A model generated the notes under the pieces. That model saw only the letters and a list, made by a program, of their open reading frames with translations. It did not search any database and had not been told where the DNA came from. The position numbers and the translations under genes are program-made. DNA of 64,000 nt from Trichosphaerium sp. ATCC 40318 (taxonomy: Eukaryota; Protista; Tubulinea). The stretch covers positions 284,917 through 348,916 of the forward strand of contig JALMLS010000573.1 in assembly GCA_038496445.1 (NCBI GenBank). Direction: 5' to 3'. Positions 1-50,436 of the stretch are shown here, piece after piece; the stretch's first letter is position 1, and each line of letters begins with the position of its first letter.

Positions 1-3000
1 CAACTTTGTCATTTGTATCGAAAAGATTCAATGTTCTGTAATCTATTGCTGTTATAACAAGTCCACTTGTTTCATAACACTCAAGTTAAAATATGACAAT
101 ATCAGATTAAACGCACGTGGCATTAGATCTATCCCAAGTCTGAGCATAGTTCAATCGCGGATTTAGATCCCAGATGGTATCACTTTGTAATCCTTTCAAG
201 TATGTTTAGTATTTGAAAATATGGCATGTTACTTGTACCTGCATCAGTGAGATACTCTACTTCTGACTCGGATTTCTCTGTATTGTTACTCCACATGTCA
301 TCAGGTAGATCATACAAGATACCTTGCATTAATTGTCCATCTTCATGCCAGAAGTCCTTGAAAACAGAATGGGTTAGTGTATTTGCGATTCTGGTTAATT
401 TGTTGTTGACTTACTGGAGACTGAACAAGTTTGCGGTCAAAAGTACAAATCAAATACCGAACGCCCTTTTCTATAGCCAGTTTAAAATAAGATCTTTTTG
501 GCTAATGTACGATTAGTGTTAATGGTATGGTATTGAAATAATTAAACAAATCATACCAACTTCTGTATCCATCCTTTAAGATCACGTCTCCAGTGTTCGT
601 TTATGTTGATAACAGAACATGATTTCCATAGATCACAGCAATGTTTTCCATAGGGACAATGCTGTAAAAATGATACAAACAAGCTACTTGAGTGCGTCGT
701 AAATATATAAGAAACCATTTTCATAAATATGAAGGCAAAAAAGTCTTGCCACAGCCTTGAACTGGGTACAATGCCTTTTGTTGCTTTCAAAATAGCAAAA
801 AACAAAGCAGATATTCTTTTATCTAAAGTTAGCTTGAGTATCAAGAAAACCCATGTATACACTAATCACCTGAATCAAGTGAAGTTGTGTTTCTGTCTTC
901 ATCAAGTTCAATATCATCAATATTTGCCTTTGCTTTGAATGCAGTTTCTACACTGTCGATATTACCATAGCTAGCTATAAGGAGTGTTAGATTTATGGTG
1001 GTTTTATTCGGTACCTGCTATAATTAAAAGCGTTCTCCCATATTTATCAACAGCATCAATGTTTGCGTTTGCATTCAGTAATGTAGAAACAACTGTGTTG
1101 TGACTTTTAGCCGCTAATGTACAATGAGTGAGATGCAACTCAAGATAGTTGATACTATAACGTACTTGCGTACAATAAAGCTGTGTATCCAAAAATACTA
1201 TCAACAATTTCAGTATCTGCATTGGCGTTGATCAAAGTGCAAACAACTTGATTATGCCCATTACAAGCTAAGTTTTATGAGGGGTATTTGTTTTAAGTAT
1301 GAAATGTCACCTGCTTCAATTAATGCAGTCTTCCCTTCATATCCAACACCATCAATATTAGCTCCTGATCTAAGAAAGAGTTTGACATATTCGTTGTGGC
1401 CCTCGCTAGCTAGCTGGTGTGAGGTATTGAAAAGATATAGATCACTTTTTACCAGCATGATGTAATGCAATGTCAATATTAGCTTTTGCCTTGATTAAGG
1501 TATTCACTACTTCATTGTGTCCGTTAGATACTAAGAAAGTATGAGTTAGAAAGTGTTGCACTTAATATTTTGCCGTAACCTGCATGGGTTAGAGGTGTGC
1601 ATCTCAGTTTGTCAGAAGCATCAATGTTTGCATTGGCTTGTATCAAGGTCAATACGACTTCATTGTGTCCCTTTCTTGCTATTGTATTGTAAGTTTTCAT
1701 GGTTGCTCTGTTGTGCTTTTATATCACCTGCAACAATTAATGCTGTATTCCCACAGCTATCAGCTTTTTCTATATTCGCATTAAGTTGAGTCAAGGTTGA
1801 TACAGCTTTATTATGTCCACTGTCCGCTGGTGTATTGTCACATGTAACTAAGTGTATATTTTGACATTACCTGCGTGAATTAAAGCTGTGCCTCCATCAT
1901 TATCAACAGCATCAATGTTTGCCTTGGCTGTTATTAAAGTTGAGATTACTTCATTGTGTCCGCCACAGGCTAATATTTTTATAAGTTAGTTATTGTGCTT
2001 GCTTTGTTTTGTTTTGTACCTGCAACAAGTAAAGGTGTGTTTCCAAAATTATCAACCGCCTCAATGTTTGTATTGGCTTTAATTAAGGTTGAAACAACGT
2101 CATTATGTCCACTAGATGCTAGGCTATGTAAGTTATAGGTTGTTATCTAAGATGTTGATATCACCTGCGAGATGTAAAGCAGTGTATCCATTGTTATCCA
2201 CACTGTTGATGCTTGCATTTGCTTGAAGTAGTATTTTGACAACTTCATTTTGTCCGTTACATGCTAGATATTGTGAGCTGTACTAGAAGTTTAGATATAT
2301 TACAATTTACCTGCACCATGCAATGCTGTAATTCCATCGTTATCACCAGCATCAATATTTACGTTAGCTTGAATAAAGGCCGAAACAACATCGTTGTGTC
2401 CTCGTGACGCTTTGGTATTGTGAGTTTTAGGATGAAGTTGTAAGTTAACACATATAGAGATGGTCACTAACGGCCATAGCCGGTTAGCCGTTTAAATTTT
2501 TGTCTATAACCGGCTAAGAAAAATAAGGGAAAACTCAAACATTTTTTGCATTTTTTTTTGCGTGATACTAGGCTTTGGACGTGTATCAAAACATAAAAGA
2601 AGTTCAAAGCCATTGAGAGCCTTTAGAACTTAAAAAAGCATGCGGATTCATGGTACAACACCAACAAATTCTCACATTTTTAAACGGTCTAGCCGATTAC
2701 AGATTTTGTTACTGGATCGAACCGCGACCCCCTCTAACCACATAGTACCTCCAATAAGTAAAGCTTTGTGCGCATTATCTGTTTCGGTATTTGTACTTGC
2801 TCTGAGTAAGGCTGACACAACTGTACTATGTCCCATATATGCTAAAATAGTACGATTATAGTCAAGATATTGCGTCCATAGTGTGATCTCATACCTGCCA
2901 AAAAAAGAGCTGTATATCCATGGTTATCAACTACCTCAGTGTTTGCATTTGCTTTTATCAAGGTCAATATCACTTCATTGTGTCCGGCGTGTGCTAGTGT

Positions 3001-3462
3001 TGTTATTGAGCCACATACTTTTCGTTGTTTTCGATAGGAAGTGAGGATACCTGCATAAATTAAAGCTGTATCACCCGTGTTATTAACAGCATCAATATTA
3101 GCACGCGATTCAATTAGCAATTTGACGATTTCATTATGTCCTTTGTGGGCTAACAGGTCACGTGATTAGAAGCTTTTGTTAAGCTTTGCGCTACCTGCAT
3201 TAATTAGAGGTGTATTCCCTTTACGTTCACCAACAGCTTCGATATTAGCGCTTTCTTTGATTAATAATTCTACAAGCTCCTTGTTTCCTTTCTCCGCTAA
3301 GTAATGTGAGTTGCCTCGTTTTTCTTTGTTATTATTACCAGCATCAAGCAACGCTTCTTTTTTGTCACTAGCGGTCAGTCCTATTACGTAGATTAACAAA
3401 CAGGTACAAACTTCGTTACCAGTACCCTCCACCTGTGTATTTTTGCTCTGTGGTTCTGCCAT
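1..3462 (-). CDS. Ankyrin-repeat / PARP-like ADP-ribosyltransferase family gene 1 (multi-exon; 3' part runs off the left edge)
   Basis: ATG at 3462 (MAEPQSKNT), then about 15 ankyrin-type exons, mostly 99 nt with GT-AG phase-1 introns (e.g. 3051-3149, 2895-2993, 2311-2409, 2165-2263, 2020-2118, 1871-1969, 1728-1826, 1580-1678, 1311-1409, 1015-1113). Consensus is AxxGHNEVVxxLIxAxANIDAVDxxGxTALxxA. A linker domain follows (SRLWQDFF, DFWHEDGQLMQGILYDLP). Bases 1-450 are nearly identical to the pre-PARP part of gene 2. Confidence 0.9.
2455..2736. mobile_element. Non-autonomous hAT-type MITE inserted in an intron of gene 1
   Basis: Imperfect terminal inverted repeats TAGAGATGGTC...GACCCCCTCTA, flanked by a near-identical 8-bp duplication (aacacata 2447-2454 / accacata 2737-2744). 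It expands an otherwise ~50-nt intron. Confidence 0.7.
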
Positions 3463-4065
3463 GACGTGTTGCCACTCCTGAAGTATCAGTACAGCGTTAT
3501 TAAGTTAGGATAAATTGACTTGCGACAACAACACTGTTTCTTTCGCTACAGCTCCGTTTTTAAGAGCAGTACTTAATGCGTTATTATGTTATGATAAACG
3601 CGAAACAGCGTATTGGGAGTCACTCACAGAGGTTAGAAAAATATTGGCTTAAATCGAACATTTACTCAGAACAATTTTTTTCATAAAGATTTCCTTTAGC
3701 GAATTTTCTGATTGAGCAGCGAGTGCCCTAAATTAAAGGTGCAAACTAAAATGCGTTTTTAATGAATTTCACTTTGTCACGTGAATAATTTTGTGCCCAG
3801 ATTGTTTGTCTTCTACCTGGAGCATTAAGTACTGCTCTTAAAAACGGAGCTGTAGCGAAAGAAACAGTGTTGTTGTCACAAGTCAATTTATCCTAACTTA
3901 ATAACGCTGTACTGATACTTCAGGAGTGGCAACACGTCATGGCAGAACCACAGAGCAAAAATACACAGGTGGAGGGTACTGGTAACGAAGTTTGTACCTG
4001 TTTGTTAATCTACGTAATAGGACTGACCGCTAGTGATAGAGAAGGAGCGTTGCTTGATGCTGGTA
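3336..4065. repeat. Inverted repeat: 244-bp arms (3336-3579 / 3822-4065) around a 242-bp spacer
   Basis: The arms are reverse complements with about 5 mismatches. Each carries upstream sequence, ATG, exon 1, intron 1 and exon 2 of one of the divergent ANK-PARP genes. Confidence 0.95.
3580..3821. promoter_or_regulatory. Shared bidirectional promoter spacer between genes 1 and 2, containing GTCACGTGA (3776-3784)
   Basis: This is the only unique DNA between the two divergent 5' arms, and it contains an E-box-like palindrome. Function is inferred from position. Confidence 0.5.
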
Positions 4066-7000
4066 CCAATACAAGATTAAATAGATTACCAGTAGCTCAT
4101 ATAACCAAAGCAACAAGTGGCAACAACGAGATCGTCAGCACATTAATAAAATCGAACGTAAATATTGATGCTGTTGATAAATACGGAAATACTGCTTTAA
4201 TCCTTGCAGGTAACATCATATGATAGCACGTGCGAATAACACATCCTAGCAAAGCACGGAAACAATAAAGTCTTATCGACTTTAATCACAGCGAAAGCTA
4301 ACATTGAGGCTGTTGATAAATACGGAAGAACACCTTTAATTGTTGCAGGTGATATCAGATAGTTCACTTGTAACTTGTAACTCTAACGTGTTATCGCAGC
4401 AAGCAATATAGTAGCCACAGAATACAACAATAATGCTGTGTCCACTTTAATCAAATCCAACGCGAATGTTGATGCTACTAGTATACATGGAAACACAGCT
4501 CTACATCTTGCAGGTAACAGTTAAACATCACATCCAAAAAAACTGTTATTTACACAATACATAGCGGATAGTGGAAGCGGTTTAATCGTCTCCATGCTAC
4601 TAAAAGCTGGTGCAAATGCTGTTGCCATTAACAAGAAAGGATACACTCCCTTACTTTACGCAGGTATAGTTCTAAGATTTAGTTCATTCGCTGTAACTTA
4701 CCTTAACTTAAGCACAAAATGGGAACATGTATGATGTTGAAATGCTAATCAAAGAAATAACCAATACTGAAGAGCGCTCAAAATCTACTTCACGTGATTA
4801 TGGTGCTAATTACTCCAACATACATGTGGAATGTATTACTCAAACTTCTTTAGATCAACTATTAACTTCTTTGTTTGTTAATAGTTTGAAAGCCACAGGC
4901 GGAGTTTTACCAACTTCAAGATTGTGGCAAGACTTTTTTGTCTGTGTATTTGTGAGAGTGATTTCCAACAAACAAGTGTTCATTCCGCTGTTTGAGACTT
5001 TCTTAAAACACTGCCCTACTTATGAAAGCTGTAATCTATGGAATTCTTGTTTGCTCACAATTGCTAACAATAAAAATGTTTCAGTGGCCACTGACGAATG
5101 GCTAAGGTACTTGGTACGATATAAGTTCATTCTTAAAATTTTACTACCATTCCGACTGACGAAATATACCTTAGCCAACGCGTTCTTATTTTAAATTGGT
5201 GATGGAAAAGGGTATTTGCCGTTTAATTTGTACTTTTGACCGCAAACTTGTTCAGTCTCCAGTAAGTCAACAACAAATTATCAGAAATCGCAAATACACT
5301 AACATTTTGTTTTCAAGGACTTCTGGCGTGAAGATGGACAATTAATGCAAGGTATCTTGTATGATCTACCTGATGACATGTGGAGTAACAATACAGAGAA
5401 ATCCGAGTCAGGCGTAGAGTGTTTCACTGATACAGGTACAAGTAACATGCCATATTTTCAAATACTAAACATACTTGAAAGGATTACAAAGTGATACCAT
5501 CTGGGATCTAAATCCACGATTGAACTATGCACAGACTTGGGATAGATCTAATGCCATGTGCGTTTAATCTGATATTGTCATATTTTAACTTGAGTGTTAT
5601 GAAACAAGTGGACTTGTTACAACAGCAACAGATTACAGAACATTGAATCTTTTCGATACAAATGACAAAGTTGCTGTCAGAGAACTACAGATCCTCAAAC
5701 AAAAAATGTCAAAACTACATGGTTACAACGATTTCAGTCTTGTTGAAGCCAAGCTTGTGTGTAATGACACCTTGAATCAAAACTTTGGAAACGCCAATAG
5801 AATACTGAAACACAGACATCAGTATGTTTTTTTTTTTTTAATTCAACTTTACCAAACGTATGTAATTTTGCTAACCTGAACTTAGAGGATTACCGAGACT
5901 GTTTAAAAAACAAGATTGGAGAGAAGATAATATCAACAAGGAATACAATGACGCCGTTTACAAAAAGTATGATAGCCTTGTTAAACATGACGCAAGTTAT
6001 AATGATGCCAACACTTCACAAGATGTAACATTCTTCTGTTTTTTTTTCTTTAGAGTATTGAATCACTAACAAAAGCTGTTTAGGTACCAGTGATATTGAT
6101 GGTTCATGGAACAACTCAAAAAGCAGCTTACAGTATTGTACAAGCTGGATTCGGAACTGTGAGTGCATTGGATGCTGGTTACTATGGCCAAGGCATCTAC
6201 TTTACAGTATGTTTAAAACCATTAAATCACCCCCTTTTCACTTTTTTACCCCACAGACAAGTATACAATACGCTTGTTCATACGATCTATCTGGCACCAC
6301 TGAAAAAACTCTGATTTTGAGTCTTGTCACTCCTGGCAACGTATATCCTGTACGCAAGTGATTTGAGTATGTTGTTCATTTAATAATGTTCTTCAAAGGT
6401 AAAACCAAACGACAAGTTAAGAGGACAACCAATTAAACCAGGCTACCAAAGTCACTACACTTTGGTTGATCGATTGGGTAGACCTCTCAAAGAACGTAAA
6501 CTTGCCAATGCAGTGTATGATGAGCTTGTTGTTGCCCAAGGTATTCCTTTATCCAAACACTTATACTATGTTTTATTCTGACGATATTAGATGTTCAAGC
6601 TGTTGCTCGTTACATCATCAAAGTTGTACAGAAACCCAAACAGCCCAAAACAAACCAAACAAAATCGTCTAAGAAGGAAGATAAACATGCCAAGCATACC
6701 AACAAGCCAAGCGGAAAAGATATTGATGATTCAGATGATGAGCTTTCTGACACTGAAGATGAGAAGTTTATTAGTAAACGGTACAATCATCACAAATTTC
6801 TTGTGTTCTGTTAACTTTATTGTACTAGAAAACTATGGGCATCTACTTCGCCACTTGACGAGGCACAGAAAAACAAAGTAGAACAAGAGCCAGGTAAGAA
6901 TATAAGTTCACCAAAGGGCCAACACGCAGACGCTGAACTCCATTTTGAACAAGAAGTACACAACGAGGTTGATCAACTACAGAGAACAAACGCCATCTTA

Positions 7001-38029: not shown

Positions 38030-38575
38030 GGTTGTCACTTTCTAATACTAAAAAAAATAGTAGTGAGCTAGCTCAGGTTGTATTTAATTTATGATACTAC
38101 CATTAAGCAAAACTGTGTTTCCTTGTGCATCAATAATATCAACATTGGCTCTAGCTTCTATTAACATTGATACAATTGCCTTGCCCTTCTAGTACTAAAA
38201 TAATAGTGTAAGCACGTTGTTGTAGCTCATTTTGTGATGGTACCAGCCCACATCAAAGCTGTGTTTCCATCTGCATCAAAAGCATCAACATTTGCTTTGG
38301 CATTGAATGCTGATACAACTTGTCAAATCTGAAAAATGCTAGGGTGTTGTCATGATCCAATGTATGATCTAGTGATTTTACTTGTATTATCCAAAGCTGT
38401 GTTTCCACTTTGATCAACAGTATCAATATCGGTGTTGGCCTTAATTAACATTGATAAACTTCATTGTGTACTTTTGGTGCTAAATAGTAGAGTGATATGT
38501 AGATGTTTATCTCATCTATCATGTTACCTGCACAAATTAAAGCTGTATTTCCATATTTATCAATAGCCTCAATTG
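38030..38575 (-). pseudogene. Degenerate ankyrin exon/intron units related to gene 3
   Basis: Four to five broken units. The intron ctaaatagtagagtgatatgtagatg...catgttacctg closely resembles the gene 3 array intron. Frame-disrupting deletions are present. Confidence 0.75.
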
Positions 38576-39270: not shown

Positions 39271-41928
39271 ACGCACGTGCGTTTTTTGAGCACTAAAAAA
39301 CTACTTTAGCTTGTGGAGTAAGTTAGAGTCGCCTTGGTACATGTAGGATCTAAAACTAAAACCGTGAGCGGGCTTTACAAGTAGAACCTTGTACATTTTG
39401 TTATGTGGTACTTCTTAGGTGTGAGGATTGTTATGACTTGTACTGACATTCATACATGATTGTCCCATACAAATACAAAAGACAGGAATGGATTTTACAG
39501 CTAAGTAGAAACAAAGTTAATAAGAGGAGAAAACAACTTTGACTTAACAGATTAATTGATGGGAGTTTGTGTCATTGCACAAGTTAATCTCAGAACATGC
39601 TTTGTACAGTCAAAACAATCATTGATTTGTGAACATATCCTTTCAAGTATCGTGTATTGGTACTTACTATTGGCATCCACAGGAGGTAAGGCATTTCACT
39701 TGGTATCTTGCATAGATTCATCGCTCTACACTCTTGAAAGATGGCCATCTACGCTAGTGTTCATGGTATTAGCAAACTAGCTAGGAATCTGGTGCATGTT
39801 TACTTTGTCTACATTGCTACGGCTCATTCTGAGATGGACATACATGGGTGCCTGCCAAGGGCTTACATCAGAGTTGCCCTGACTGTTTTCAAAATGGGAA
39901 AGATGTAGGGAAGCCATTTACTACATGATATAAGACACAATACCCTGTGCACATAAGATGAATACTGTTTACACCATTGCTTTATTACGTTTTCAACATC
40001 AAACAGTTGATTCAAGTGTATTTCCGTTGTAGCGCTTTGCTCAAATAGTGCTGAAAAACCTCAGTTACACTACAAGACTTGAATTCTAAGTGTTTAGGTG
40101 CCTAGGTAGTCCATTATTTGGCGTGCTTCACGCGTTGTAATTTTGAAAAGAGACTTGTTCGAACGCTTTTCATGCACGAGCAGATTGTTTTATCACTTTT
40201 TAAAACCTGTTTGGTGAGAAAAAACACTAAAGAACATTCAAGTGCTTTAAATACTTCAATTCATTATGTTGCGAGCCCTTGCTGCAGTTAATGCGTTGGT
40301 CTTGTCGCAAACTTGTAGCCACCTCACTGCGAGTTGCTCAATGTACGATAGCGTGTACGAGACATCTAAAAATCGCAGATGAAACCAACGTAGATAGAAA
40401 AACTAAAAAAAAGAGAATAAAATCTCCACCGCTGATGAAAAGATACACAGCTACAGTTACGTTCTTGTATTTTGGCGTCCGGTTCTCGTTATGATAATGA
40501 CAATTCCGTCTGGTTACAATAACATTATGATAATACCTTTGTGTTTGCCGGGCGGGGTAAAAAATAGCCCGCAAAAGAGATTATTCGCCACTTTCGAGTG
40601 ACAAAGTTGAGAGAGGGTATTCGCTACTATTTGGTGAAATATTTGAAAGACCTTTTCGAACGATACTTTTTTTCCGCCCGTAAGACACTGTTATTTGTCG
40701 CGTAAGGCTACCACTTCACTCCGTTAGTGACTGTTATTTATGTCTTTGCCGTTTTTTATGCAATAAATGATCGAATCTTTACAGTGCTTGTGGTTGGTAA
40801 ATGTCGTAAAAAAAGCGGCCGAGATAGGCTCTGTGGCTGTACAAGTCAGATATGCGTACAGTGCAAAGCGGCCGAACTCAGTGTTGCTTCTTCTATGGAA
40901 CTGCAAGCAAGTGTGCAAGTGTTTATTGAAACGGAGGCTACAAGCAAGGAGAACCGTTTCTATACAGCATCTTTCGTATGGAATCAACAATTCATTCCGA
41001 GTTTGGAAGCCAACATAACTGAAGGAAATGAATTTACAGCGGACGGACAGTGTCTGTCTAACACTAGACGCGATGTCAAATCGCTATGTTAACAAATCCC
41101 TTATTACGTTCTATATAACTTGTACTTCTCCAACATCCTTTATGTGCTTTTATCTCAATGCATTTTGCTGTGCATTTCACGTTGATACCTGGTTCTTTTA
41201 TCTTTCAGGATTTTACTTTACGCTGCGGTACTACAACTCATAGGATGACTCAAAGACTCGTAATCAACAGTACTGTCACCTGTAAGTAATATCAGTTAAT
41301 TTAATAGATAACTGGTATCGTATCTACTACTTGTACATCAAAGGAATAGCGTGATTCTGTAATGTACACATCTTAAAACAAGTCCTCCAGATTGACCATC
41401 TTAATATTATACCTCTAAATACAAGAACCAATCAATATTTCTTAGTTGCACGGGTTTTCTATCACATGATAGAATATAGACGTGCGCAATTGGCCTTGTT
41501 TCATATGTAAGGAGCTTAGACGTTGGACAAAGGTGGATATTTCAATGTATGCTGATGTACTCAAATTACTAATCTTCACTTGTGTCTAACGCATCAAGTT
41601 CAATTATCTCAACTAAACACAGTAACGCATATCATAAAACTATCAGAAACAGTCTAGCATCTATCGATATGGCTGGAGCAATAGCACTTTGTGAAGGTAC
41701 TTACTTAGCGTATAAGACTTCAATCCAAACAAACAGCATAGTTCAGTGCTTGTTGTATTTCCATCAATAGTGGCGCTGAAGTACTTGTGAGGAAATCCAT
41801 ACAGATTGACAATGGAATATTGTATTGAAACCAAGTCTATGTTGTGATGCGTTACGAAGAGAACAATGAGTAAGTAAAATGCTTTATTTGTGTGAATGAA
41901 TATTGGCAGCGTGTGCTGATAGTGGAGC

Positions 41929-44900
41929 CTACTTGTTTGTTCTTTCAAGTTGGGCTAGTTTCGCAAGTAGAGTGGCGTTTCTCTCTTGTACGTCAGTTAG
42001 GCTTTTCCTTAAGGTGATGTTATCTTGCTTCAGGATGGCATTGGTTTTGGATAAGTTGACGTTGTCTTTCTTTAGGTTGTTGACACTTTCTTTAATGATG
42101 GCATTACTTTCTGTTAATTTGACGTTGTCTTCCTTCAGGTCATTGACACTTTCTATCAACTTGACATTGTCTTGCTGTAGGTTGTTGACACTTTCTGTTA
42201 GGTTGATGATGTGTTGTTGCTTGGTTGAGTTGTCTTGTTGTAGGTTATTGACACTTTCTGTTAGGCTGATATTGTCTCGCTTCAGGTCGGCATTGTTTTC
42301 TGCTATTTTGGCAATGTCTTGCTTTAGATTATTGACGGTTTCTGTCAATTTGATGATGCGTCGTTGCTTGATCGAGTTGTCTTGCTCTAACTTCGCATTA
42401 TACTGTTGTTGGTTTGTATTGTTCTGTTGTAATTTCTCAAGAAGTTCCTTCATATTCGCATTACTCTTCTTTAGTTTGTTCATCTCGTAGTTTGCTTTCT
42501 GTAATTCTATGTCGAGATATACATCATTGCTAGTTGATTGCTGGTCATCAGTTGAATCCACATGGGCAGCCCATAGTTTTCTAGTACAACAGCGTAAGTT
42601 TAAATTCAAGCAAAACATGTGACTTCTTACCGGTTACTAGTAAAATTATCATCATCAGAGTCAGAGATATCATCATCTGAACCTTCATTTTCTTCTTTGT
42701 TTTGTTTCTTTGTCTTTTTACCACCTTTCTTGGGTTTTTTTGTTTTCATTCGTTTTTTGATTTGATTATCTTTCACTGCAACTTTGATGATGTAACGAGC
42801 AACAGCTTGAGAATCTGATTGCAAAATCAAGTTAATACAATTTTTTGGTAGTAGTTGCTCCTGTACCTTGTGCAACAACAAGCTCATCGTATACCGCGTT
42901 GGCAAGTTTATTTTCTTTGAGAACTCTACCTAAGCTATCTACCAATGCAAAATGACTTTGGTAGCCTGGTTTTATTGGCTGTCCTCTTAACTTGTCTTTT
43001 GGGTGTACCTTTTTGCAAATTAGATACGACAATAAAATTGATTACATACAGGATATACATTGCCAGGAGTGACAAGACTCAAAATAAGTGTTTTCTCTTT
43101 CTTTCCTCCCTTATCATAAGAACACGCATATTTTATACTCCGCTGTTGTGAAAGAAATGAATATAGTGTTACATTATTATCGCGTACTGTGAAGTATATC
43201 CCTTGGCCATAGTAACCAGCATCTAAAGCACTCACAGTTCCAAAACCAGCTTTTACAATACTGTAAGCTGCTTCTTCACTTGTACCATGAGCCATCAATA
43301 TCACTGGTGACTAAACGTAGGTTAGTACAAATAGCTTTTTTTTAACAAACATTACCTCTTCTTTTGAAGCGTCCTCGTTATTGGTACTTGAATCTTTTTG
43401 CATTGGTGTGGAATTGTGTTGTTTGTAAACACTCTCTTTGTACTTTTTATGTATGCCATTTTTCCAATTTTGTTTTTTAAACAACTTGGCAAGTCCTCTA
43501 CAAGTACATACTTAGACACATTAAAACAGGGTATAATAATAGAGTACTGATGTCTATGTTGTAGTATGTTGTTGAATTGTCCAAAGTTGTCATTCAAGAT
43601 ATCATTGTAAACAAGAGTCGCTTCAACAATATCGTATTGGTCATAGCCGTGCATTTTGGACATCTGTTGTTTGAGGACGTTGAATTCTCTTACAGCCACT
43701 TTGTCAGTTGTATCAAGCAGATTCAGTGTCCTGTAGTCAGTCGCCTTTAAATCAATGCCCCTTTTTAAAATAAACTGAAAAAACCCCAAATGGTAATAAG
43801 TTTGAACGCACGTGCTGTTAGATCTGTCCCAATTATTTGCAAAATGCAACCTCAGATTTAACTCCCGCGTGTTTTCAGCCTTAATTCCTTTGTGGTACTT
43901 TAGTGTTTGTAGCAAAACAGTGACCTTGATACCTGTAGTAATATCTTCAAAGTATTCAATTTGATCGGTGTTGCTCCAGGCATCATTGGGCATATCAAAC
44001 AAGATGCCTTGCATTAATTCTCCATCTTGTTTCCAGAAGTTCTAGTAAAAAGCAAACAGTATAAAGTTTACATGTGGTTTGTGGATTCGTACTGCAGACA
44101 AAGCAACTTTGGGATTGCACACAGAACAAATTAAATAACAAATGCCCTTTTCCATTGCCAGTTTAAAATAAGAACGGGTTGGCTGAAGGTTGTAACAATT
44201 AAAACAAGTAAAGCATTTCAAAGGTAGCATACCAAGTACCGAAGCCATTTTCTAGGATGTTTAAGATCTTGTTTCCACTGCTCGAAGTATGCTTTGTTGT
44301 ATTGAGTCATTTGCATTTCCAATCTGTTCCTGTTTGTGGAGGACATAAAGGATGAACAAGATTTCCACAATGCATGGCATTGTTTGCCACTTGGACAGTA
44401 TTTTAAAAAAGTTACAAACGCTTCAACAGCTGCTGGAGCATTTGATATCACTTGTTTAAATAACGATAAAAGAAAATCTTGCCACTTTTTCTTATCTGGT
44501 GATATAACTAAAACCCAACTGTTAACTATTGTTTGTTTCAAACAAATAGAGTTACAAGTGTGAAATTGCAACAGTACCTAAATCAACATTGTTTCTATTT
44601 TCATCACCAGCGTTCTTATTTAAATGTGCTTTAAGTAATATTGGTATAATTTCATTATTTCCTCTTTGTGCTAAATAGTAACATAAGCTAAACTTGTAGT
44701 ATTTCTTTTGATGTAACCTGAAAAATGTAAAGCTGTATTTCCATCTTTATCAACAGCATGAATATTGGCATTGACATTGAGTAATGTTGATACAACTTCA
44801 TTGTGTCCTTCTTGTGCTAAATAGTAGAGTAAGGTATGTACATGTTATATCTCATTATATCATGTTACCTGCATAAATTAAAGCTGTTTTTCCATCTTTA

Positions 44901-46609
44901 TCAACAGCATCAATATTGGCATTGGCGTTGAGTAATGTTGATACAACTTCATTGTGTCCTTTTAATGCTAAATAGTAGAGTGAGGTATGTACATGTTATA
45001 TCTCATCATATCACATTACCTGCACAAATTAAAGCTGTCTTTCCATCTTTATCAACAGCATGAATATTGGCATTGGCGTTGAGTAATGTTGATACAACTT
45101 CATTGTGTCCTTCTGATGCTAAATAGTAGAGTGAGGTATGTACATGTTATATCTCATCATATCATGTTACCTGCATAAATTAAAGCTGTCTTTCCATCTT
45201 CATCAACAGCATGAATATTGGCATTGGCGTTGAGTAATGTTGATACAACTTCATTGTGTCCTTTTTGTGCTAAATAGTAGAGTGAGGCATGTACATGTTA
45301 TATCTCATCATATCATGTTACCTGCATAAATTAAAGCTGTTTTTCCATCTTTATTAACAGCATGAATATTGGCATTGGCGTTGAGTAATGTTGATACAAC
45401 TTCATTATGTCCACACGATGCTAAATAGTAGAGTGAGGTATGTACATGTTATATCTCATCATATCATGTTACCTGCATAAATTAAAGCTGTTTTTCCATC
45501 TTTATCAACAGCATGAATATTGGCATTGGCGTTGAGTAATGTTGATACAACTTCATTATATCCACACAATGCTAAATAGTAGAGTAAGGTATGTACATGT
45601 TATATCTCATCATATCATGTTACCTGCATAAATTAAAGCTGTTTTTCCATCTTTATTAACAGCATGAATATTGGCATTGGCGTTGAGTAATGTTGATACA
45701 ACTTCATTATATCCATACAATGCTAAATAGTAGAGTAAGGTATGTACATGTTATATCTCATTATATCATGTTACCTGCATAAATTAAAGCTGTTTTTCCA
45801 TCTTCATCAACAGCATGAATATTGGCATTGGCGTTGAGTAATGTTGATACAACTTCATTGTGTCCTTCTTGTGCTAAATAGTAGAGTAAGGTATGTACAT
45901 GTTATATCTCATCATATCATGTTACCTGCACAAATTAAAGCTGTTTTTCCATATTCATTAACAGCATGAATATTGGCATTGGCGTTGAGTAATGTTGATA
46001 CAACTTCATTGTACCCGCTTTGTGCTAAATAGTAGAGTAAGGTATGTACATGTTATATCTCATCATATCATGTTACCTGCATAAATTAAAGCTGTATTTC
46101 CATATTTATCAACAGCATGAATATTGGCATTGGCGTTGAGTAATGTTGATACAACTTCATTGTACCCGCTTTGTGCTAAATAGTAGAGTAAGGTATGTAC
46201 ATGTTATATCTCATCATATCATGTTACCTGCACAAATTAAAGCTGTTTTTCCATATTTGTCAACAGCATGAATATTGGCATTGGCGTTGAGTAATGTTGA
46301 TACAACTTCATTGTGTGCTAAATAGTAATTTGAGATATGCACCATGTTGTATCTCATATAAAGCATTACCTGATCTAATAAAGGCTGTGTTTATATCTTC
46401 GTCAACAGCACAATTGTTTACTATCACTTTAAGTAACATTGAAACAATTTGAGTGTAGCCATTTGTTGCTGTACTTGGTCAACTATTTGCTTATCAATGC
46501 ATTACAAACCTGCAAAAGAAAACACAATTTCAATTATGGGGAGATGGATGTTGTTGGTTGGTTCTTCCTGTTCTAAATGTTGGTTTTCGTCACTTTGTGA
46601 TTCTGTCAT
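41929..46609 (-). CDS. Ankyrin-repeat / PARP-like ADP-ribosyltransferase / coiled-coil gene 3 (complete)
   Basis: ATG at 46609 is preceded by the same GAGTG(A/G)CAACACGTC as genes 1 and 2. About 13 ankyrin exons and the linker domain follow. ART motifs: LMAHGT, DAGYYGQGIYFT, YACSY, YDELVVAQ. A long coiled coil ends at the stop at 41929. Confidence 0.92.
42040..42380 (-). repeat. Coding tandem repeat (21/42-nt heptad units; SVNNLQQDNVKLTE) in the gene 3 coiled coil
   Basis: Repeated ttgacactttc...ttgtcttg blocks, translating to reiterated 14-21 aa units. Confidence 0.8.
44718..46327 (-). repeat. Tandem array of 11 ankyrin exon+intron units, period 151 bp (99-nt exon + 52-nt intron)
   Basis: Exon lower ends at 44718, 44869, 45020, 45171, 45322, 45473, 45624, 45775, 45926, 46077 and 46228 (the last has an in-frame 9-nt deletion). 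Confidence 0.97.
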
Positions 46610-47875
46610 GACGTGTTGTCACTCTTGAGGTTATCACAAATCAGTATTAAGTCGGTGTTACTTGACACATGAGATTTTTCAGTGAAACGTTATTGTAAAT
46701 TTGTGTTGCGGTTCTGGTTTTGTGTTTTTTTTAAATTAACTGAATCGTTTCAAGAAGGCGATTGCCTGTACAATAGTTGAAATAATTGTTGAAATAAAAA
46801 TTGCAAAGGAAAAGTTAAGTTTACGGAACTGACTCAGATTATCAATAGTTTTTGCTATTGATAATTTTTTTTTCATATAACGCTGAAGGCATTTTTCCAG
46901 TCTTTTTGCCGTCTCTATTCTGAGAGCCGGCTTGGTATTGTATATAATTTCGGCTATTTTGCCGGCAGTAAATAAAGAACGTAGGTAACAAAAACTGTCG
47001 TTTATTGCCTCATTGTATTGCTGGAAGTCACTATCTGCACTGTGATCACTGCCAACGTACTGATCTATGTCCTCAAGTTCTGTTTTGTCTATCATTGGGA
47101 TTGAGAGTACCACCTTGAGCAGCATGGGAAATCAGCGCTCTGTGATTCATAATTTGGGTAGTAAGTTGATGTTGGTGGGTCTGCTCTATCCCAGTGCTCT
47201 GTTGGTTTCTTTAGTCTCAAGGGCGACCCATTATATATATTTGCAATGAATGAATCCCTTCTGTTGCCTTCATTGTATTTTGCTGGGTGCCGCCCTGTTC
47301 TTTTCTTCGGGCCTGCTGTAGTTTTTTTTCTTCTTCAATCTCTGTATCTCTTGTCTTTACCGTACCAGTAAGTTTATTGTACACTTTTCAAGGTGTTATT
47401 GCAGCACCAAGTGCATACATGCGTTGTTGCAGTTCTAGTTCAGATGGCGGCAGTCTTTTTGGGTTTGCAAGTGGCCTCTTATAAAAGTTAAGTCGGCCTG
47501 ATGCGCAGCAAACATAGCAATCCTCTGCCAATTAGCTACACAATTCTTAGACAAAAAAAAAACTACTTACGCGTTTTTACAGTGTTACGCTGAGTCTTCT
47601 CAATCTATGCATATGGATAAAAGAGATTGTACTGTGATTACCTGAACTCAACATCAATAAGTATGTCAGTGATACGCCCTGCCATTATGTCAAGTTCTGT
47701 ATCTGAAAACCCTATAGTCCTTGTTAGTGCGTTGTGATGTGACTTGTCAGTAGGAGAGAGAAGAAAAACTTAGACAAGTTTTGGCCTTGAAAGGTCGAGC
47801 CTCCAAGGCTCCCAATCCGCGTTGTACGAAGTACAAGAAACCCCAAACCGAAGGACGGCGGCTTGGGTAGCCTCG

Positions 47876-48904
47876 TTAGGGCTCCATCTCCAAAGCTGCG
47901 CGTGTTTTACTGGCCATGGAGCGTTTGATGCGTCTGCGCTGATCGGCATCTATGACGATGTAAAGTAAAACTGCGTTGGAGCGCCAATCTCCGAGGTCAC
48001 GGACGATTGGCAAGGAGGCCCCCATCTTGAAGGCCCACGTGGCACCGCCACGGCGAAAGGAGTGGCCAGCGTATAGAGCAGGGTCATAACCTAGCAGGTT
48101 CATTATCTGTTTCGTGCGAGCAACGAAACGTGAGTATGTGAGCGTCCAGCGAGAGCCATTTATAATGGCGGCGAAGATAGGTCCAGAGCGAGGAGCCACT
48201 TTGTCGAGGAGCGTTGAGAGGTATGGAACTGGAGAGATCTCCAGTCCAGAGTTGACAATTTCGATGGATAAGATTCGTGATCGGTCCCGAATCGTCTTGG
48301 TCTTGGTGAAATTGAGAGTGAATCCGTCAGCGTGTCGAGTGATGATACTACGGCAAAGGTGGTATCCAGGAGCAAAGCTGCTGACGGATTTGGGTACTAG
48401 TTGACCGGAACGAAGGAACGTGTCAAAGGCTGTAAGGGCAGCTGTGTAGTAGATGAAGTCTTTCGTGTTGTTGAGGTCAAGAACTTCTTTCATGCGTACC
48501 AGTATCCGTGGTGATATTGGGTGTTTCCGTCGAATGCCATGAGGGTTGCATTTGGAAATACCGCTCATGAGGAGTTGGAAACGAAACATTAGGTCGGTAC
48601 GTAGAGGAGGGAAGCTGTACCATTGCGCATAGAAGCGCACAGAAGTGATGTATTTGTGAATGGTCGAGGGTGAGAGTTTGAATCCTCTGAACATGATCGT
48701 GACAACGTCGCACAGGTTAGATTCAGTGATAGGGAGAGGTGAAGTGTTGAGAAGGATTGTTGCTTTCAGGTAAAATCTCCAGCCAGATCTATAAGATGCC
48801 CAAGTGCCTTTAGCTAAAGCCGCTTGGAGGAGGATATTCTTCTTCTTCTCTAACCTGTTCCAGTCCATGGTTGAGGGTCTAGTTTGAAGTTTTGCGAGGC
48901 GCAA
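47876..48904 (-). CDS. Tyrosine recombinase of the DIRS-like element
   Basis: FLRSG (catalytic R), KTKT, GHSFRRGGAT (HxxR), GDWRS and the terminal Tyr in LLY. Confidence 0.93.
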   Translation of the reverse strand: MRLAKLQTRPSTMDWNRLEKKKNILLQAALAKGTWASYRSGWRFYLKATILLNTSPLPITESNLCDVVTIMFRGFKLSPSTIHKYITSVRFYAQWYSFPPLRTDLMFRFQLLMSGISKCNPHGIRRKHPISPRILVRMKEVLDLNNTKDFIYYTAALTAFDTFLRSGQLVPKSVSSFAPGYHLCRSIITRHADGFTLNFTKTKTIRDRSRILSIEIVNSGLEISPVPYLSTLLDKVAPRSGPIFAAIINGSRWTLTYSRFVARTKQIMNLLGYDPALYAGHSFRRGGATWAFKMGASLPIVRDLGDWRSNAVLLYIVIDADQRRRIKRSMASKTRAALEMEP

Positions 48905-50430
48905 AAGATGTGACAGGCGTGGAGGTCGTTACGAGAAAGCAAATCTGTGATGGTGTTGTCTTCAGACGAGATGTGTTGAGTCGTCAGACGGAAGTGAAAA
49001 CGCGCTTGAAGGTTGTGAATGGAGCGGATGAGAGGCATAGCTCCTTTGACCTTTGTTGTGAGGCGATTGATGGCAGCCTCGGTGTTGGTGTTGTCAGTGT
49101 ACACTTGGCAGATGGTGTGACCTGAGAAAAGATGTGAGAACACAACGATACCCTTATAAAGCGCGTATATTTCTCGCCAAGCGATTGAGAGACGACGTTG
49201 TTCGTCATTGAAGGCTCCCATGAGCCAATGTCCGTTGTAATATACCCCATAGCCCCAATCTGAGGTGTCAGCAGTGAAGAATTTATGATTTTCAGGTAAA
49301 GGATCCACAAGTATCGCTTTACTGTTGAAATGAGACATGAAGTTAATCCACCAGGCGATGTCGTCTTGGAAGGCGCTGTTGAGAGATACCCAGTGGTAAG
49401 GACGCGAGGCGGCATTCATGCAAGTGAGGATGCATTTAAGGTATGTACGTCCGCCATATATGACTTGAGAAGCCCAGTTGAGTTTGCCCGCAAGAGATTG
49501 GAGATCTTTCTTGCGAGCTTTCTTGCGATTTCTGAAAAAGAGCAAGAGGTCCAATGTTTCTTGGAGTTTAGAAGCCGAAAGGCGAGCTTCACGCTTGACG
49601 GAGTCAAGTTCAACACCCAAGAATGTGATGGTGGTGGAAGGTACCGAGATTTTGGAAGGTTTGACAGTGAAACCAAGAGAACGAAGAAGGGTGACGAGGG
49701 CGTCACGTACTTTGACACAAGTGTCGAAGTCTTTAGCAGCGATGAAGAAATTGTCAACATAAACGGTGACGTATATCCAACAATCTTTAGCGAATGATTC
49801 GCATACTGCTTGTGTGAGAATGCAGAAAATGTATGCTGCAATGTTGAGTCCAAAGGGCATGCGAGTGTCGAGGTAGTATCTACCATTCCAGAAGAATACG
49901 AGGATTCTCCAGGAGTCACGAGCCATAGGTACAGCTCGATAAGCTTCACTGATGTCGATCTTAGCCATGAAGCAAGCGAGGCCTAAGATGAACATGAAGC
50001 GAATGGCTTCAGCGATACCTGCCATTTTGAAATGTGGAGGCACATTCATGTCGTTGACAGATCGGCCTCGAGGTGCGCTGAGATCAACCACGCGGCGTGC
50101 TTTGCCGTTGGATTTAACTACGACACCTAGGGCATTGGAGCGGAAGGGTTTGGAAGAGCAAGGAGCTATTCTTCCGAGAGAGAGTTCGTGAGAAACGTCA
50201 TCACTGAGTAATTTCTCGTGTTCGAAGCAAGAGGAATAATTGTTAACAAATGTAGGCTCAGAGGGAGCATTTTGGTTAACCACGCTAACGCCATAAGTAA
50301 GCCAGGCGACAATAACGGAACGCAGAGGGTGATCAGAAAGCATTTTATTCCAGAGGTGAACACGAATAGTAAGGGGTGAAAGGACTACCCCTTTTGGCAA
50401 CATATCAGTCGCGAGAATGACGTCTCCCAC
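48850..50430 (-). CDS. Reverse transcriptase / RNase H of the DIRS-like element (catalytic motif mutated to YVDN)
   Basis: RRVVDLS, KIDISEAYR, MPFGL, YVDNF, FLGVELDS, LAGKLNWAS, IAWREIYA, YTDN, DLLSR. Confidence 0.93.
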   Translation of the reverse strand: MGDVILATDMLPKGVVLSPLTIRVHLWNKMLSDHPLRSVIVAWLTYGVSVVNQNAPSEPTFVNNYSSCFEHEKLLSDDVSHELSLGRIAPCSSKPFRSNALGVVVKSNGKARRVVDLSAPRGRSVNDMNVPPHFKMAGIAEAIRFMFILGLACFMAKIDISEAYRAVPMARDSWRILVFFWNGRYYLDTRMPFGLNIAAYIFCILTQAVCESFAKDCWIYVTVYVDNFFIAAKDFDTCVKVRDALVTLLRSLGFTVKPSKISVPSTTITFLGVELDSVKREARLSASKLQETLDLLLFFRNRKKARKKDLQSLAGKLNWASQVIYGGRTYLKCILTCMNAASRPYHWVSLNSAFQDDIAWWINFMSHFNSKAILVDPLPENHKFFTADTSDWGYGVYYNGHWLMGAFNDEQRRLSIAWREIYALYKGIVVFSHLFSGHTICQVYTDNTNTEAAINRLTTKVKGAMPLIRSIHNLQARFHFRLTTQHISSEDNTITDLLSRNDLHACHIFCASQNFKLDPQPWTGTG

Positions 50431-50436
50431 GAGATT

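What the first reader, a model, noticed from the sequence alone, without database searches (positions are those of the whole stretch)
44718..46327. Natural 'DARPin library': homogenised ankyrin exon array hypervariable at binding-surface residues, fused to an ADP-ribosyltransferase
Seen: 11 units of 151 bp with almost identical introns and framework (NEVVSTLLNANANIHAV). Changes concentrate at the two residues before the conserved Gly (gene order, units 2-11: QS, QS, QE, LY, LC, SC, QK, SE, LK, QE), at the next residue (H/Y), at the beta-hairpin (DKYGK, DKYGN, NEYGK, DEDGK, NKDGK, DKDGK, NKDGK, DEDGK, DKDGK, DKDGK, DKDGN) and at helix-1 I(C/Y)A. Known: ankyrin positions 2, 3, 5, 13 and 14 form the concave binding face and are among those randomised in designed ankyrin proteins. 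Concerted evolution plus diversification of contact residues is the pattern of fungal HET-E/NLR repeats and brown-algal exon-shuffled LRR/TPR receptors. Inference: a rapidly re-specifiable sensor coupled to an NAD+-consuming effector, i.e. a candidate protist immune or non-self receptor system.
Basis: partly seen in the sequence, partly recalled or inferred. Interest (0 to 1): 0.93.

Follow-up and report, generated by a model that had tools for sequence, protein, structure and literature searches.

The report
Homogenised ankyrin exon array in PARP gene
A eukaryotic gene for an ankyrin-repeat ADP-ribosyltransferase contains ten to eleven almost identical exon-plus-intron copies that differ almost only at the residues ankyrin repeats use to grip their targets, a pattern previously described in fungal and brown-algal candidate immune receptors but here joined to a PARP enzyme.

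Summary
On the minus strand, a 151-bp unit (a 99-nt phase-1 ankyrin exon plus a 52-nt GT-AG intron) is repeated 10.6 times at 94% identity.

The array sits in an intact 25-exon, 1162-aa gene. The gene encodes about 13 ankyrin repeats, a lineage-restricted linker, a PARP catalytic domain with an H-Y-E triad, a Lys-rich/acidic stretch and a coiled coil. A transcript-derived homologue (53% identity over 646 aa) supports the model.

Variation is sharply localised:
- 13 of 27 nt vary in the two patches (ANK positions 13-16 and 1-5).
- 2 of 72 nt vary in the rest of the exon.
- 5 of 52 nt vary in the introns.

Outer-helix positions that vary freely in diverged paralogues are invariant here. Among the six closest unit pairs, 19 changes are nonsynonymous and 2 synonymous.

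Two results go against simple positive selection. Overall dN/dS is 0.79, and synonymous sites inside the patches are also diverged. The best reading is concerted evolution that keeps and reassorts binding-face diversity, with recent nonsynonymous additions.

An immune role is unproven. There is no NOD module, no expression data and no population data, because no sequencing run was listed.

The closest precedents are fungal NLR ankyrin repeats with high internal conservation and Ectocarpus exon-per-repeat receptors. I rate it a new variant of a known kind. First-stage notes of this scan report similar arrays on other pieces of this genome; those notes are unverified.

The parts
41929..46609 (-). 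Whole gene model: 25 exons, 1162 aa, all introns GT-AG and 41-52 nt. ATG at 46609-46607, stop TAG at 41931-41929.
   Evidence: The spliced model has a single terminal stop. It aligns to transcript-derived P0001 at 53% identity over 646 aa, E = 0.
46370..46609 (-). Exon 1 (46510-46609) and exon 2 (46370-46468): acidic N-terminus and a degenerate capping ankyrin repeat. Intron 2 (46318-46369) is a diverged copy of the array intron.
   Evidence: The paralogues start with a similar M-x-E-x-Q-S N-terminus.
44718..46317 (-). Homogenised array. Unit 1 exon is 46228-46317 (90 nt). The ten 99-nt exons are 46077-46175, 45926-46024, 45775-45873, 45624-45722, 45473-45571, 45322-45420, 45171-45269, 45020-45118, 44869-44967 and 44718-44816. 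Ten 52-nt phase-1 introns separate them.
   Evidence: TRF period 151, 10.6 copies, 94%. Exon and intron lists. Pfam Ank/Ank_4 hits above the curated cut-off on a single exon. Mean amino-acid identity among units 85-87%.
46162..46173 (-). Example of variable patch A: the first four full codons of each exon, ANK positions 13-16 (Q/L/S, S/E/Y/C/K, G, H/Y). The same offset applies in every unit.
   Evidence: Codon table. 9 of 12 nt are variable across units.
46096..46110 (-). Example of variable patch B: ANK positions 1-5 of the next structural repeat (D/N, K/E, Y/D, G, K/N). Position 10 (Y/C/F) lies 12-14 nt further on. The same offset applies in every unit.
   Evidence: Codon table. Variable sites 65, 68, 71, 79 and 93.
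44578..44670 (-). Diverged C-terminal capping ankyrin exon (93 nt), preceded by a diverged 47-nt intron.
43356..44525 (-). Linker/middle domain, six exons: 44233-44525, 44093-44182, 43933-44041, 43812-43887, 43548-43760 and 43356-43497. It has a conserved C-P-x4-C-x2-L-W-x2-C motif and no Pfam family.
   Evidence: Exon boundaries were fixed by alignment to P0001 and P0002. Only 3 hits among 1.84 billion representatives. Pfam negative. Motif alignment.
42867..43310 (-). PARP catalytic domain core, three exons: 43188-43310 (HGT and YGQGIYFT), 43050-43142, and 42867-43008 (PGYQSH and YDELVV). The domain ends in exon 24.
   Evidence: Pfam PARP hit on exon 21 alone (E = 7.7e-4). Homologues pass the Pfam gathering score. 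Profile hit to PARP12, E = 7e-9, with E aligned to the third triad position. Foldseek TM about 0.70 to PARP12 and tankyrase for the homologue model.
42631..42814 (-). Exon 24: end of the catalytic domain (ARYIIKV), then a Lys-rich stretch followed by an acidic Ser/Asp stretch.
   Evidence: The same layout is present in P0001 and P0002.
41929..42580 (-). Last exon: a 216-aa coiled coil with internal 21-aa (63-nt) repeats.
   Evidence: TRF rows at 42034-42209. Coiled-coil Pfam families. Colinear with the C-terminus of P0001.
38100..38573 (-). Decayed partial copy of the same exon-intron array (about 3 units, frame-disrupted), 3.4 kb downstream of the gene.
   Evidence: blastn 78-90% identity including the intron. 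Sequence read.
1..6900 (.). Two paralogous ANK-linker-PARP genes placed head to head (minus strand from 3462 downwards; plus strand from 3939 to about 6900). They have the same 99-nt phase-1 ankyrin exons, but the repeats are diverged.
   Evidence: tblastn, ORFs, exon scan.

Best explanation
The region is the central part of an intact minus-strand gene (41929-46609). The gene belongs to a lineage-restricted family of ankyrin-linker-PARP-coiled-coil proteins.

One ankyrin repeat per symmetric phase-1 exon is the ancestral layout of the family. In this gene, ten to eleven exon+intron units have been amplified and kept nearly identical by recombination in the 151-bp register (unequal crossing-over or gene conversion).

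The DNA alternates constant and variable blocks. The constant blocks are the 52-nt intron with its flanks and the roughly 50-nt core that encodes the outer helix and loop. The variable blocks are two short patches that encode the beta-hairpin (positions 1-5, plus 10) and the end of the inner helix (13-16).

Each intron lies between the two patches of one structural repeat. Recombination in the constant blocks therefore reassorts binding-surface pieces in frame.

Diversity at the target-binding face is retained, reshuffled and recently added to by nonsynonymous changes, while everything else is homogenised.

By analogy with tankyrase, the ankyrin solenoid would recruit targets for ADP-ribosylation by the H-Y-E PARP domain, and the coiled coil would provide oligomerisation. 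Diversification would change target specificity.

Shown: gene structure, domains, the localisation of variation and its excess over intron divergence.

Inferred: selection as the cause, the recombination mechanism, enzymatic activity, and any role in immunity or non-self recognition.
For: - Array and splice structure.
- A transcript-derived homologue with the same ANK-linker-PARP-coiled-coil order.
- PARP domain and triad.
- Nucleotide diversity is 0.087 in exons, 0.029 in introns and 0.013 in the framework.
- Variable sites: 13/27 in patches, 5/52 in introns, 2/72 in the rest of the exon.
- Nucleotide identity (94%) exceeds amino-acid identity (85-87%).
- Among the six closest unit pairs there are 19 nonsynonymous and 2 synonymous changes. 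pN/pS is 2.75. Patch pN is 0.119 against 0.019 for introns.
- The variable positions are the hairpin/inner-helix ones. Equally unconstrained outer-helix positions stay invariant.
- 5 of 6 DARPin-randomised positions vary.
- Patch-A and patch-B variants occur in different combinations, and D/N and K/E, 3 nt apart, show all four combinations.
- Paralogues in the window share the exon layout but are not homogenised.
- The same evolutionary regime is documented for fungal NLR ankyrin repeats (PMC4986451) and for exon-per-repeat receptors in Ectocarpus (PMC3341825).
Against: - Overall dN/dS is 0.79.
- Inside the patches pS (0.46-0.60) exceeds pN (0.22-0.25). A simple test for positive selection therefore fails, and much of the patch diversity may be old.
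- This is only one array of ten short units. The closest-pair comparisons overlap and give borderline significance (P = 0.049 for nonsynonymous versus synonymous plus intron).
- ANK surface positions are the least constrained in any ankyrin protein.
- No reads could be laid. Transcription of this array, its copy number and its polymorphism are therefore untested.
- No structure of this protein's own ankyrin domain could be made. Single-sequence AF2 of the homologue gave a wrong all-beta model.
- ADP-ribosyltransferase activity is inferred from motifs only.
Confidence: 0.6

Rival explanations
1. A neutral by-product. A recent tandem amplification started from three or more already different founder units. 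Gene conversion then homogenised the long identical stretches and stopped at the mismatched patches. Surface residues are simply unconstrained. No selection for diversity acts, and the array has no special sensing role.
For: - dN/dS over all pairs is 0.79, and synonymous differences cluster in the patches (GGG/GGA, TAC/TAT, CAC/CAT, TTG/TTA, TCG/TCA, AAA/AAG).
- Patch-A haplotypes fall into three contiguous groups: units 2-3, units 5-7, and the rest.
- The array-variable positions are also the most variable in diverged family repeats (Spearman 0.62).
Against: - The introns should be at least as diverged as the patches between old founder units. Yet they are homogenised, so a heterology barrier cannot explain why only the patches escaped.
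- Outer-helix positions with equally high entropy in diverged repeats (18, 19, 22, 25, 27) are invariant here.
- The closest unit pairs differ by 19 nonsynonymous and 2 synonymous changes, with patch pN six times intron divergence.
Confidence: 0.25
2. An assembly artefact: a collapsed, expanded or chimeric reconstruction of a shorter or different repeat.
For: The array is 1.6 kb of 94%-identical 151-bp units, which is hard to assemble. No reads could be examined.
Against: - All units compared are distinct (3-14 differences).
- Every exon keeps its frame and every intron is exactly 52 nt with intact GT..AG.
- Similarity decays with distance along the array (P = 0.013).
- A diverged relic copy lies nearby.
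Confidence: 0.05
3. A splicing cassette array. Because all exons are symmetric (phase 1-1, 99 nt) with identical splice sites, individual transcripts would include different subsets of units. This would give somatic isoform diversity rather than one 13-repeat protein.
For: The splice sites and introns are identical, and any subset of exons stays in frame. Alternative splicing of exon-per-repeat receptor genes is reported in brown algae (title and abstract of PMC11378527).
Against: The related transcript L001 carries at least seven consecutive repeats. Ankyrin domains need several stacked repeats to fold. There are no RNA data for this locus.
Confidence: 0.07

Closest known systems
Fungal NLR ankyrin/TPR/WD repeats with high internal conservation (Podospora HET-E/NWD family; Dyrka et al. 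2014, PMC4986451)
   Same: - Repeats are about 85% or more identical to each other over more than 100 aa.
- They evolve in concert.
- Variation is restricted to a handful of positions that map to the concave face (inner helices and beta-hairpin) of the ankyrin solenoid.
- The proposed role is rapid re-specification of a recognition domain attached to an effector.
   Different: - Here there is no NACHT/NB-ARC module.
- The effector is a PARP domain plus a coiled coil.
- Each repeat is a separate exon, and the introns are homogenised as well.
- Repeat-number polymorphism and site-wise positive selection, shown in Podospora, are untested here.
- Global dN/dS is below 1.
Ectocarpus ROCO-LRR and NB-ARC-TPR genes with one repeat per exon and exon shuffling (Zambounis et al. 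2012, PMC3341825)
   Same: One repeat sits in one symmetric exon of fixed length. Gene families are lineage-specific and diversify in the repeat domain. Exon-level recombination is proposed as the source of recognition diversity.
   Different: - The repeats here are ankyrin, not LRR or TPR.
- The introns here are only 52 nt and hold no inactivated or inverted exon copies.
- The units are far more homogeneous here.
- The effector is PARP, not a Roc-COR or NB-ARC module.
Tankyrase (PARP5a/b)
   Same: An ankyrin-repeat target-recruitment domain, an oligomerisation element and an H-Y-E PARP catalytic domain lie in one polypeptide. The model of the homologue superposes on tankyrase catalytic domains (TM about 0.66-0.71).
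   Different: - There is no SAM domain; a C-terminal coiled coil takes its place.
- A lineage-specific linker domain is present.
- By sequence profile the catalytic domain is closest to PARP12, not tankyrase.
- The ankyrin part is a homogenised array, not five conserved ARCs.
PRDM9 zinc-finger minisatellite arrays
   Same: A tandem coding array is homogenised at the DNA level, synonymous sites included. Differences concentrate at the few ligand-contacting residues of each unit.
   Different: The PRDM9 array lies within a single exon and binds DNA. Here the units include introns and form a protein-binding solenoid. This comparison rests on my own knowledge and was not tested here.
Designed ankyrin repeat proteins (DARPins)
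   Same: A constant 33-aa framework carries diversity at positions 2, 3, 5, 13 and 14 on the concave face. The statement that the randomised positions form the concave paratope is from PMC8229355.
   Different: - This is a natural gene.
- DARPin position 33 is invariant here, while positions 1, 10 and 16 vary.
- Each site uses only 2-5 residues.
- The DARPin position numbers come from my own knowledge of Binz et al. 2003. They were not found verbatim in a held paper.

Membership tests
Ankyrin repeat (Pfam PF00023 / PF12796 clan) | 33-residue repeat matching the Ank profile with the G-x-T-A/P-L and helix-turn-helix consensus | tested here: met
   A single 32-aa exon scores above the curated cut-off for Ank_4 (25.3 vs 22.7 bits) and Ank (23.0 vs 21.1), and fixes the register. 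The homologue's repeats give E = 1e-34 to 1e-38 and strong PDB ankyrin/DARPin hits.
PARP catalytic domain (PF00644), H-Y-E class | Match to the PARP catalytic profile and fold | tested here: met
   Close homologues pass the gathering score (30.9 and 36.5 vs 26.7 bits). The window protein is 53% identical to P0001 across the domain. Its exon 21 alone gives E = 7.7e-4. Profile hit to PARP12, E = 7e-9. Foldseek TM about 0.70.
PARP catalytic domain (PF00644), H-Y-E class | His, Tyr and Glu of the NAD+-binding/catalytic triad present | tested here: met
   HGT, GIYFT and DELVV are all present. The Glu aligns with the third triad position of PARP12, which is Ile there. Family members vary at the His (H/Q/S). 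Activity itself was not tested.
Tankyrase (PARP5) | SAM domain between the ankyrin clusters and the PARP domain | tested here: not met
   No SAM hit appeared in Pfam scans of the exons scanned between the ankyrin and PARP parts (exons 15 and 17-20; exon 16 not scanned) or of homologues P0001 and P0002. The family has a linker of its own and a C-terminal coiled coil.
Tankyrase (PARP5) | Catalytic domain orthologous to tankyrase | tested here: not met
   The profile search lists PARP12, PARP4, ZAP, PARP10, PARP15, PARP1 and PARP16. No tankyrase appears at E <= 0.01.
NLR / STAND receptors with highly conserved repeats (fungal type) | Central NACHT or NB-ARC nucleotide-binding domain | tested here: not met
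   None appeared in Pfam scans of the seven pieces of the 1162-aa model that were scanned, or of the homologues.
NLR / STAND receptors with highly conserved repeats (fungal type) | Repeats at least 85% identical over at least 100 aa | tested here: met
   Mean pairwise amino-acid identity is 0.85 for units 2-11 and 0.87 for units 2-10, over about 330 aa.
NLR / STAND receptors with highly conserved repeats (fungal type) | Positive diversifying selection at concave-face positions | tested here: inconclusive
   The location criterion is met. Patch pN is 6-8 times intron divergence, and the closest pairs show 19 nonsynonymous to 2 synonymous changes. However, overall dN/dS is 0.79 and patch pS is high.
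NLR / STAND receptors with highly conserved repeats (fungal type) | Repeat-number polymorphism among isolates | not testable with these tools
   No sequencing run was listed. An exact search of metagenome contigs found nothing.
Exon-per-repeat shuffling receptors (Ectocarpus type) | Each repeat encoded by one symmetric exon of constant length | tested here: met
   There are ten 99-nt phase-1 exons. The two paralogues have the same layout.
Exon-per-repeat shuffling receptors (Ectocarpus type) | Inactivated or inverted repeat exons inside the introns of the repeat domain | tested here: not met
   All array introns are 52 nt and hold no such copies. Only a decayed partial array lies 3.4 kb downstream.

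The most novel reading that the evidence does not exclude
The array is one working member of a germline cassette system. Homogenised introns and exon cores would act as recombination joints placed between the two hypervariable patches of each ankyrin repeat. Unequal exchange within and between ANK-PARP paralogues would then keep generating new binding surfaces. This would give the organism a re-specifiable, NOD-less non-self or pathogen sensor whose output is ADP-ribosylation. Differential exon inclusion might add further diversity.
Probability: 0.2. Interest if true: 0.85.

Novelty: new variant of a known kind. Interest (0 to 1): 0.6.

Why it matters
Highly homogenised repeat arrays that vary only at ligand-contact residues are rare outside fungal NLRs. 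Dyrka et al. (PMC4986451) report that about 1% or less of ANK/TPR/WD repeats in plants, animals and fungi overall are of this kind. Such arrays are taken as a hallmark of fast-evolving recognition.

Finding that regime in a different lineage has three consequences if it holds:
- It would widen the set of candidate innate-recognition architectures. Here the regime appears in an exon-per-repeat gene whose effector is a PARP-type ADP-ribosyltransferase, with no nucleotide-binding switch.
- It would link them to the ADP-ribosylation arm of host-pathogen conflict.
- It would offer a natural counterpart of DARPin libraries.

The constant-variable-constant DNA layout around each intron also gives a concrete, testable mechanism for in-frame reassortment of binding-surface pieces.

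Tried and rejected
- **Reads.** The look-up of sequencing runs listed no run for 41900-46650. Read laying could therefore not be used, so there is no evidence on transcription, copy number or polymorphism.
- **Exact metagenome search.** A 26-nt invariant framework word gave 0 matches in metagenome contigs.
- **Relatives in metagenomes.** The search for related loci with P0001 returned only remote PARP relatives at 35-42% identity, with no arrays. Viral contigs gave one weak hit, so there is no sign of a giant-virus link.
- **Structure of the ankyrin domain.** The spliced protein has no reference and was not typed in. Single-sequence AF2 of the homologous repeats (L001) gave an all-beta solenoid, which is plainly wrong for ankyrin. 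I discarded it.
- **Structure of the linker plus PARP.** AF2 of P0001 residues 1-460 was poor overall (pLDDT 57.8). Only the PARP part was usable, and the linker fold stays unknown.
- **Linker domain.** Pfam gave only sub-threshold hits (Nab2-type CCCH finger E = 0.006, RGS E = 0.008). I do not rely on them.
- **First gene model.** A first model read three in-frame introns through and missed a 90-nt exon. I corrected it against P0001 and P0002.
- **Patch donors.** I searched the window for donors of the patch-A cassettes outside the array and found none.
- **Organism.** I could not determine it. Rfam gave no hits, and the homologues come from unnamed JGI and MMETSP transcript assemblies.
- **DARPin positions.** The exact randomised position numbers were not found verbatim in a held paper.

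Full report
**1. What is in the sequence**

Tandem Repeats Finder reports one strong array at 44711-46316. It has period 151, 10.6 copies, 94% matches and no indels.

Read on the minus strand, each unit is a 99-nt exon followed by a 52-nt intron with GT..AG ends. The intron falls after the first base of an Ala codon (G|CA), so all exons are symmetric phase 1-1.

There are ten near-identical introns, ten 99-nt exons, and an upstream 90-nt exon of the same kind that lacks three codons.

**2. The gene**

I built a model by hand. I then corrected it against two transcript-derived homologues found with a full HMMER scan of 1.84 billion representatives.

The final model has 25 exons at 46609-41929 on the minus strand. 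All introns are GT-AG and 41-52 nt long. The protein is 1162 aa with a single terminal stop. Its order is:
- an acidic N-terminus;
- a degenerate capping repeat;
- eleven homogenised ankyrin units;
- one diverged capping repeat;
- a linker of about 310 aa with no Pfam family;
- a PARP catalytic domain;
- a Lys-rich stretch followed by an acidic stretch;
- a 216-aa coiled coil with internal 21-aa repeats.

The linker is very restricted in distribution. It had only three hits among 1.84 billion representatives, at 62%, 56% and 34% identity.

P0001 comes from a 2.6-kb cDNA-like JGI contig, L001. That contig carries at least seven ankyrin repeats, a retained short intron, and then the same linker, PARP domain, basic/acidic stretch and coiled coil. 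The window protein aligns to P0001 at 53% identity over 646 aa. The architecture is therefore expressed in a related organism, and my exon boundaries are supported.

The organism of the window could not be determined. It is a eukaryote with about 36% GC and introns of about 50 nt.

**3. The enzyme**

The homologues pass the Pfam PARP gathering score.

A profile of eight family members hits the human PARP12 catalytic domain best (E = 7e-9). The Glu of DELVV aligns at the third triad position, which is Ile in PARP12.

An AF2 model of the homologue is poor in the linker. It is usable in the PARP part and superposes on PARP12 and tankyrase catalytic domains with TM about 0.7.

The window protein has H (HGT), Y (GIYFT) and E (DELVV).

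There is no SAM domain, and tankyrase is not among the sequence-profile hits. The protein works like tankyrase in outline: ankyrin recruitment, oligomerisation, H-Y-E PARP. It is not a tankyrase.

**4. Where the units differ**

The register comes from the Pfam Ank alignment. The first full codon of each exon is ANK position 13 in DARPin numbering, where D is position 1. I used this register throughout.

Variable positions found in at least two units are 1, 2, 3, 5, 10, 13, 14 and 16. Positions 17-33 are invariant in units 2-9, including every synonymous site.

At the nucleotide level, for units 2-10:

| Region | Variable sites | Fisher test against patches |
|---|---|---|
| Patches | 13 of 27 | - |
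| Rest of exon | 2 of 72 | P = 2.4e-7 |
| Introns | 5 of 52 | P = 3.7e-4 |

Pairwise diversity is 0.087 in exons, 0.029 in introns and 0.013 in the framework. Nucleotide identity (94%) is higher than amino-acid identity (85-87%).

Five of the six positions randomised in DARPins vary (hypergeometric P = 0.0015). The randomised positions form the concave paratope (PMC8229355). The position numbers themselves are from my own knowledge of Binz et al. 2003.

**5. Is this more than relaxed constraint?**

Surface positions vary in any ankyrin protein, so enrichment alone proves little. Three further observations carry the argument.

(a) I compared the array with 14 diverged repeats of the same family, from the two paralogues in the window and from L001. 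Outer-helix positions 18, 19, 22, 25 and 27 are as variable in those repeats as the hairpin and inner-helix positions. In the array they are invariant. The split is 7/7 against 1/6 (Fisher P = 0.005).

(b) Patch nonsynonymous divergence is 0.22-0.25. That is about eight times the intron diversity.

(c) Among the six most similar unit pairs there are 19 nonsynonymous and 2 synonymous differences. pN/pS is 2.75. Patch pN is 0.119 against 0.019 for the introns. These pairs overlap, so the P values (3e-5 and 0.049) are optimistic.

**6. What speaks against simple positive selection**

Nei-Gojobori dN/dS over all pairs is 0.79. Inside the patches, pS (0.46-0.60) exceeds pN.

Pure synonymous alternatives sit in the patches: GGG/GGA, TAC/TAT, CAC/CAT, TTG/TTA, TCG/TCA and AAA/AAG. 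They mark three contiguous groups of units: 2-3, 5-7, and the rest.

Part of the patch diversity is therefore older than the homogenised flanks, or was imported as short blocks.

A pure heterology-barrier model cannot explain this. In that model, conversion would stop at mismatched patches. But the introns, which should have been at least as diverged between old units, are homogenised.

The picture that fits everything has two parts. Concerted evolution homogenises introns and cores, while diversity at the binding-face patches is shielded, reassorted and recently extended by nonsynonymous changes.

Reassortment is visible. The same hairpin variant occurs with different patch-A variants. D/N and K/E, 3 nt apart, show all four combinations.

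**7. A mechanistic point from the layout**

This section is inference.

The exon boundary lies inside the inner helix, between positions 11 and 12. The two patches of one structural repeat therefore flank an intron: positions 1-5 and 10 sit at the 3' end of one exon, and 13-16 at the 5' end of the next. The invariant core lies between the two patches within an exon.

The DNA thus alternates constant and variable blocks. Any exchange within a constant block yields an in-frame new combination of binding-surface pieces.

**8. Is the array real?**

All nine full units compared (units 2-10) differ by 3-14 nt. All frames and splice sites are intact, and every intron is exactly 52 nt. Neighbouring units are more alike than distant ones (permutation P = 0.013).

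A decayed partial copy of the array, introns included, lies at 38100-38573.

These features favour a real array. No sequencing run was listed, so there is no read-level confirmation and no evidence on transcription or polymorphism.

**9. Context**

The window holds two more family members, placed head to head at 1-6900. They have the same 99-nt phase-1 ankyrin exons but diverged repeats. The exon-per-repeat layout is therefore ancestral, and the homogenisation is specific to this array.

First-stage notes of this scan report similar arrays and several other PARP fusions on other pieces of the same genome. These are unverified leads, and I could not inspect those pieces.

**10. Comparison with what is known**

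The closest regime is that of fungal NLR repeats with high internal conservation. There, ANK, TPR and WD repeats are at least 85% identical, show repeat-number polymorphism, and carry positively selected sites on the concave face. Such repeats make up only about 0.4-1.2% of repeats in plants, animals and dikarya overall (PMC4986451).

The exon-per-repeat layout with lineage-specific diversification matches Ectocarpus ROCO-LRR and NB-ARC-TPR genes (PMC3341825).

The present case differs in four ways:
- it lacks a NOD module;
- it uses a PARP domain plus a coiled coil as output;
- its introns are homogenised as well;
- its linker domain is lineage-specific.

I therefore rate it a new variant of a known kind.

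**11. Verdict**

The best explanation has confidence about 0.6. It is an intact ankyrin-PARP gene whose recognition surface is kept diverse within a concertedly evolving exon-intron array.

The immune-receptor reading is a reasonable hypothesis with probability about 0.2. It needs isolate, expression and biochemical data.

Noticed in passing
window 3166-3462 (-) and 3939-4223 (+): The two head-to-head ANK-linker-PARP paralogues begin with first exons whose products share the first 33 residues exactly and stay similar for about ten more (both start MAEPQSKNTQVEG). This indicates an inverted duplication around a shared 5' region of about 480 bp.
   Followed up: partly
window 38100-38573 (-): A decayed fragment of the same ankyrin exon-intron array lies here. 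It is about three units long, 78-90% identical at the nucleotide level including the intron, and has frame disruptions. It is probably a pseudogenised partial duplicate.
   Followed up: partly
window 47876-51744 (-): A GC-rich (46-48% against about 36%) retroelement lies immediately upstream of the gene. It has a 526-aa reverse-transcriptase ORF (Pfam RVT_1, E = 2e-17), a 342-aa ORF with an H-x-x-R motif that suggests a tyrosine recombinase (no Pfam hit), and a 435-aa Ser-rich ORF. It looks DIRS-like.
   Followed up: partly
window 55503-56006 (-), 61749-63089 (+), 33861-34391 (+), 57685-58586 (-): Further transposon remnants: two pogo/Tc1-type DDE_1 transposase fragments, confirmed by Pfam for 55503-56006 and 62649-63089, and reverse-transcriptase fragments (33861-34391 has a weak RVT_1 hit below the curated cut-off; I take them to be of non-LTR type by sequence inspection only; 57685-58586 was not scanned).
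   Followed up: partly
window 42034-42209 (-): The coiled-coil exon of the gene has its own internal tandem repeat of 63 nt (21 aa, motif ESVNNLxxDN). There are about 2-4 copies at 79-82% identity.
   Followed up: no
window 44233-44525 (-), 554-790 (-), 4925-5140 (+): The linker domain of all three paralogues and of P0001 has a conserved C-P-x4-C-x2-L-W-x2-C motif. It may be a small metal-binding knuckle. Pfam gives only a sub-threshold Nab2-type CCCH finger hit.
   Followed up: partly
window 28525-29806 (-): Exons of a family-4 glycosyltransferase gene (Pfam Glyco_trans_1_4, E = 9e-13). The gene is unrelated to the finding.
   Followed up: no
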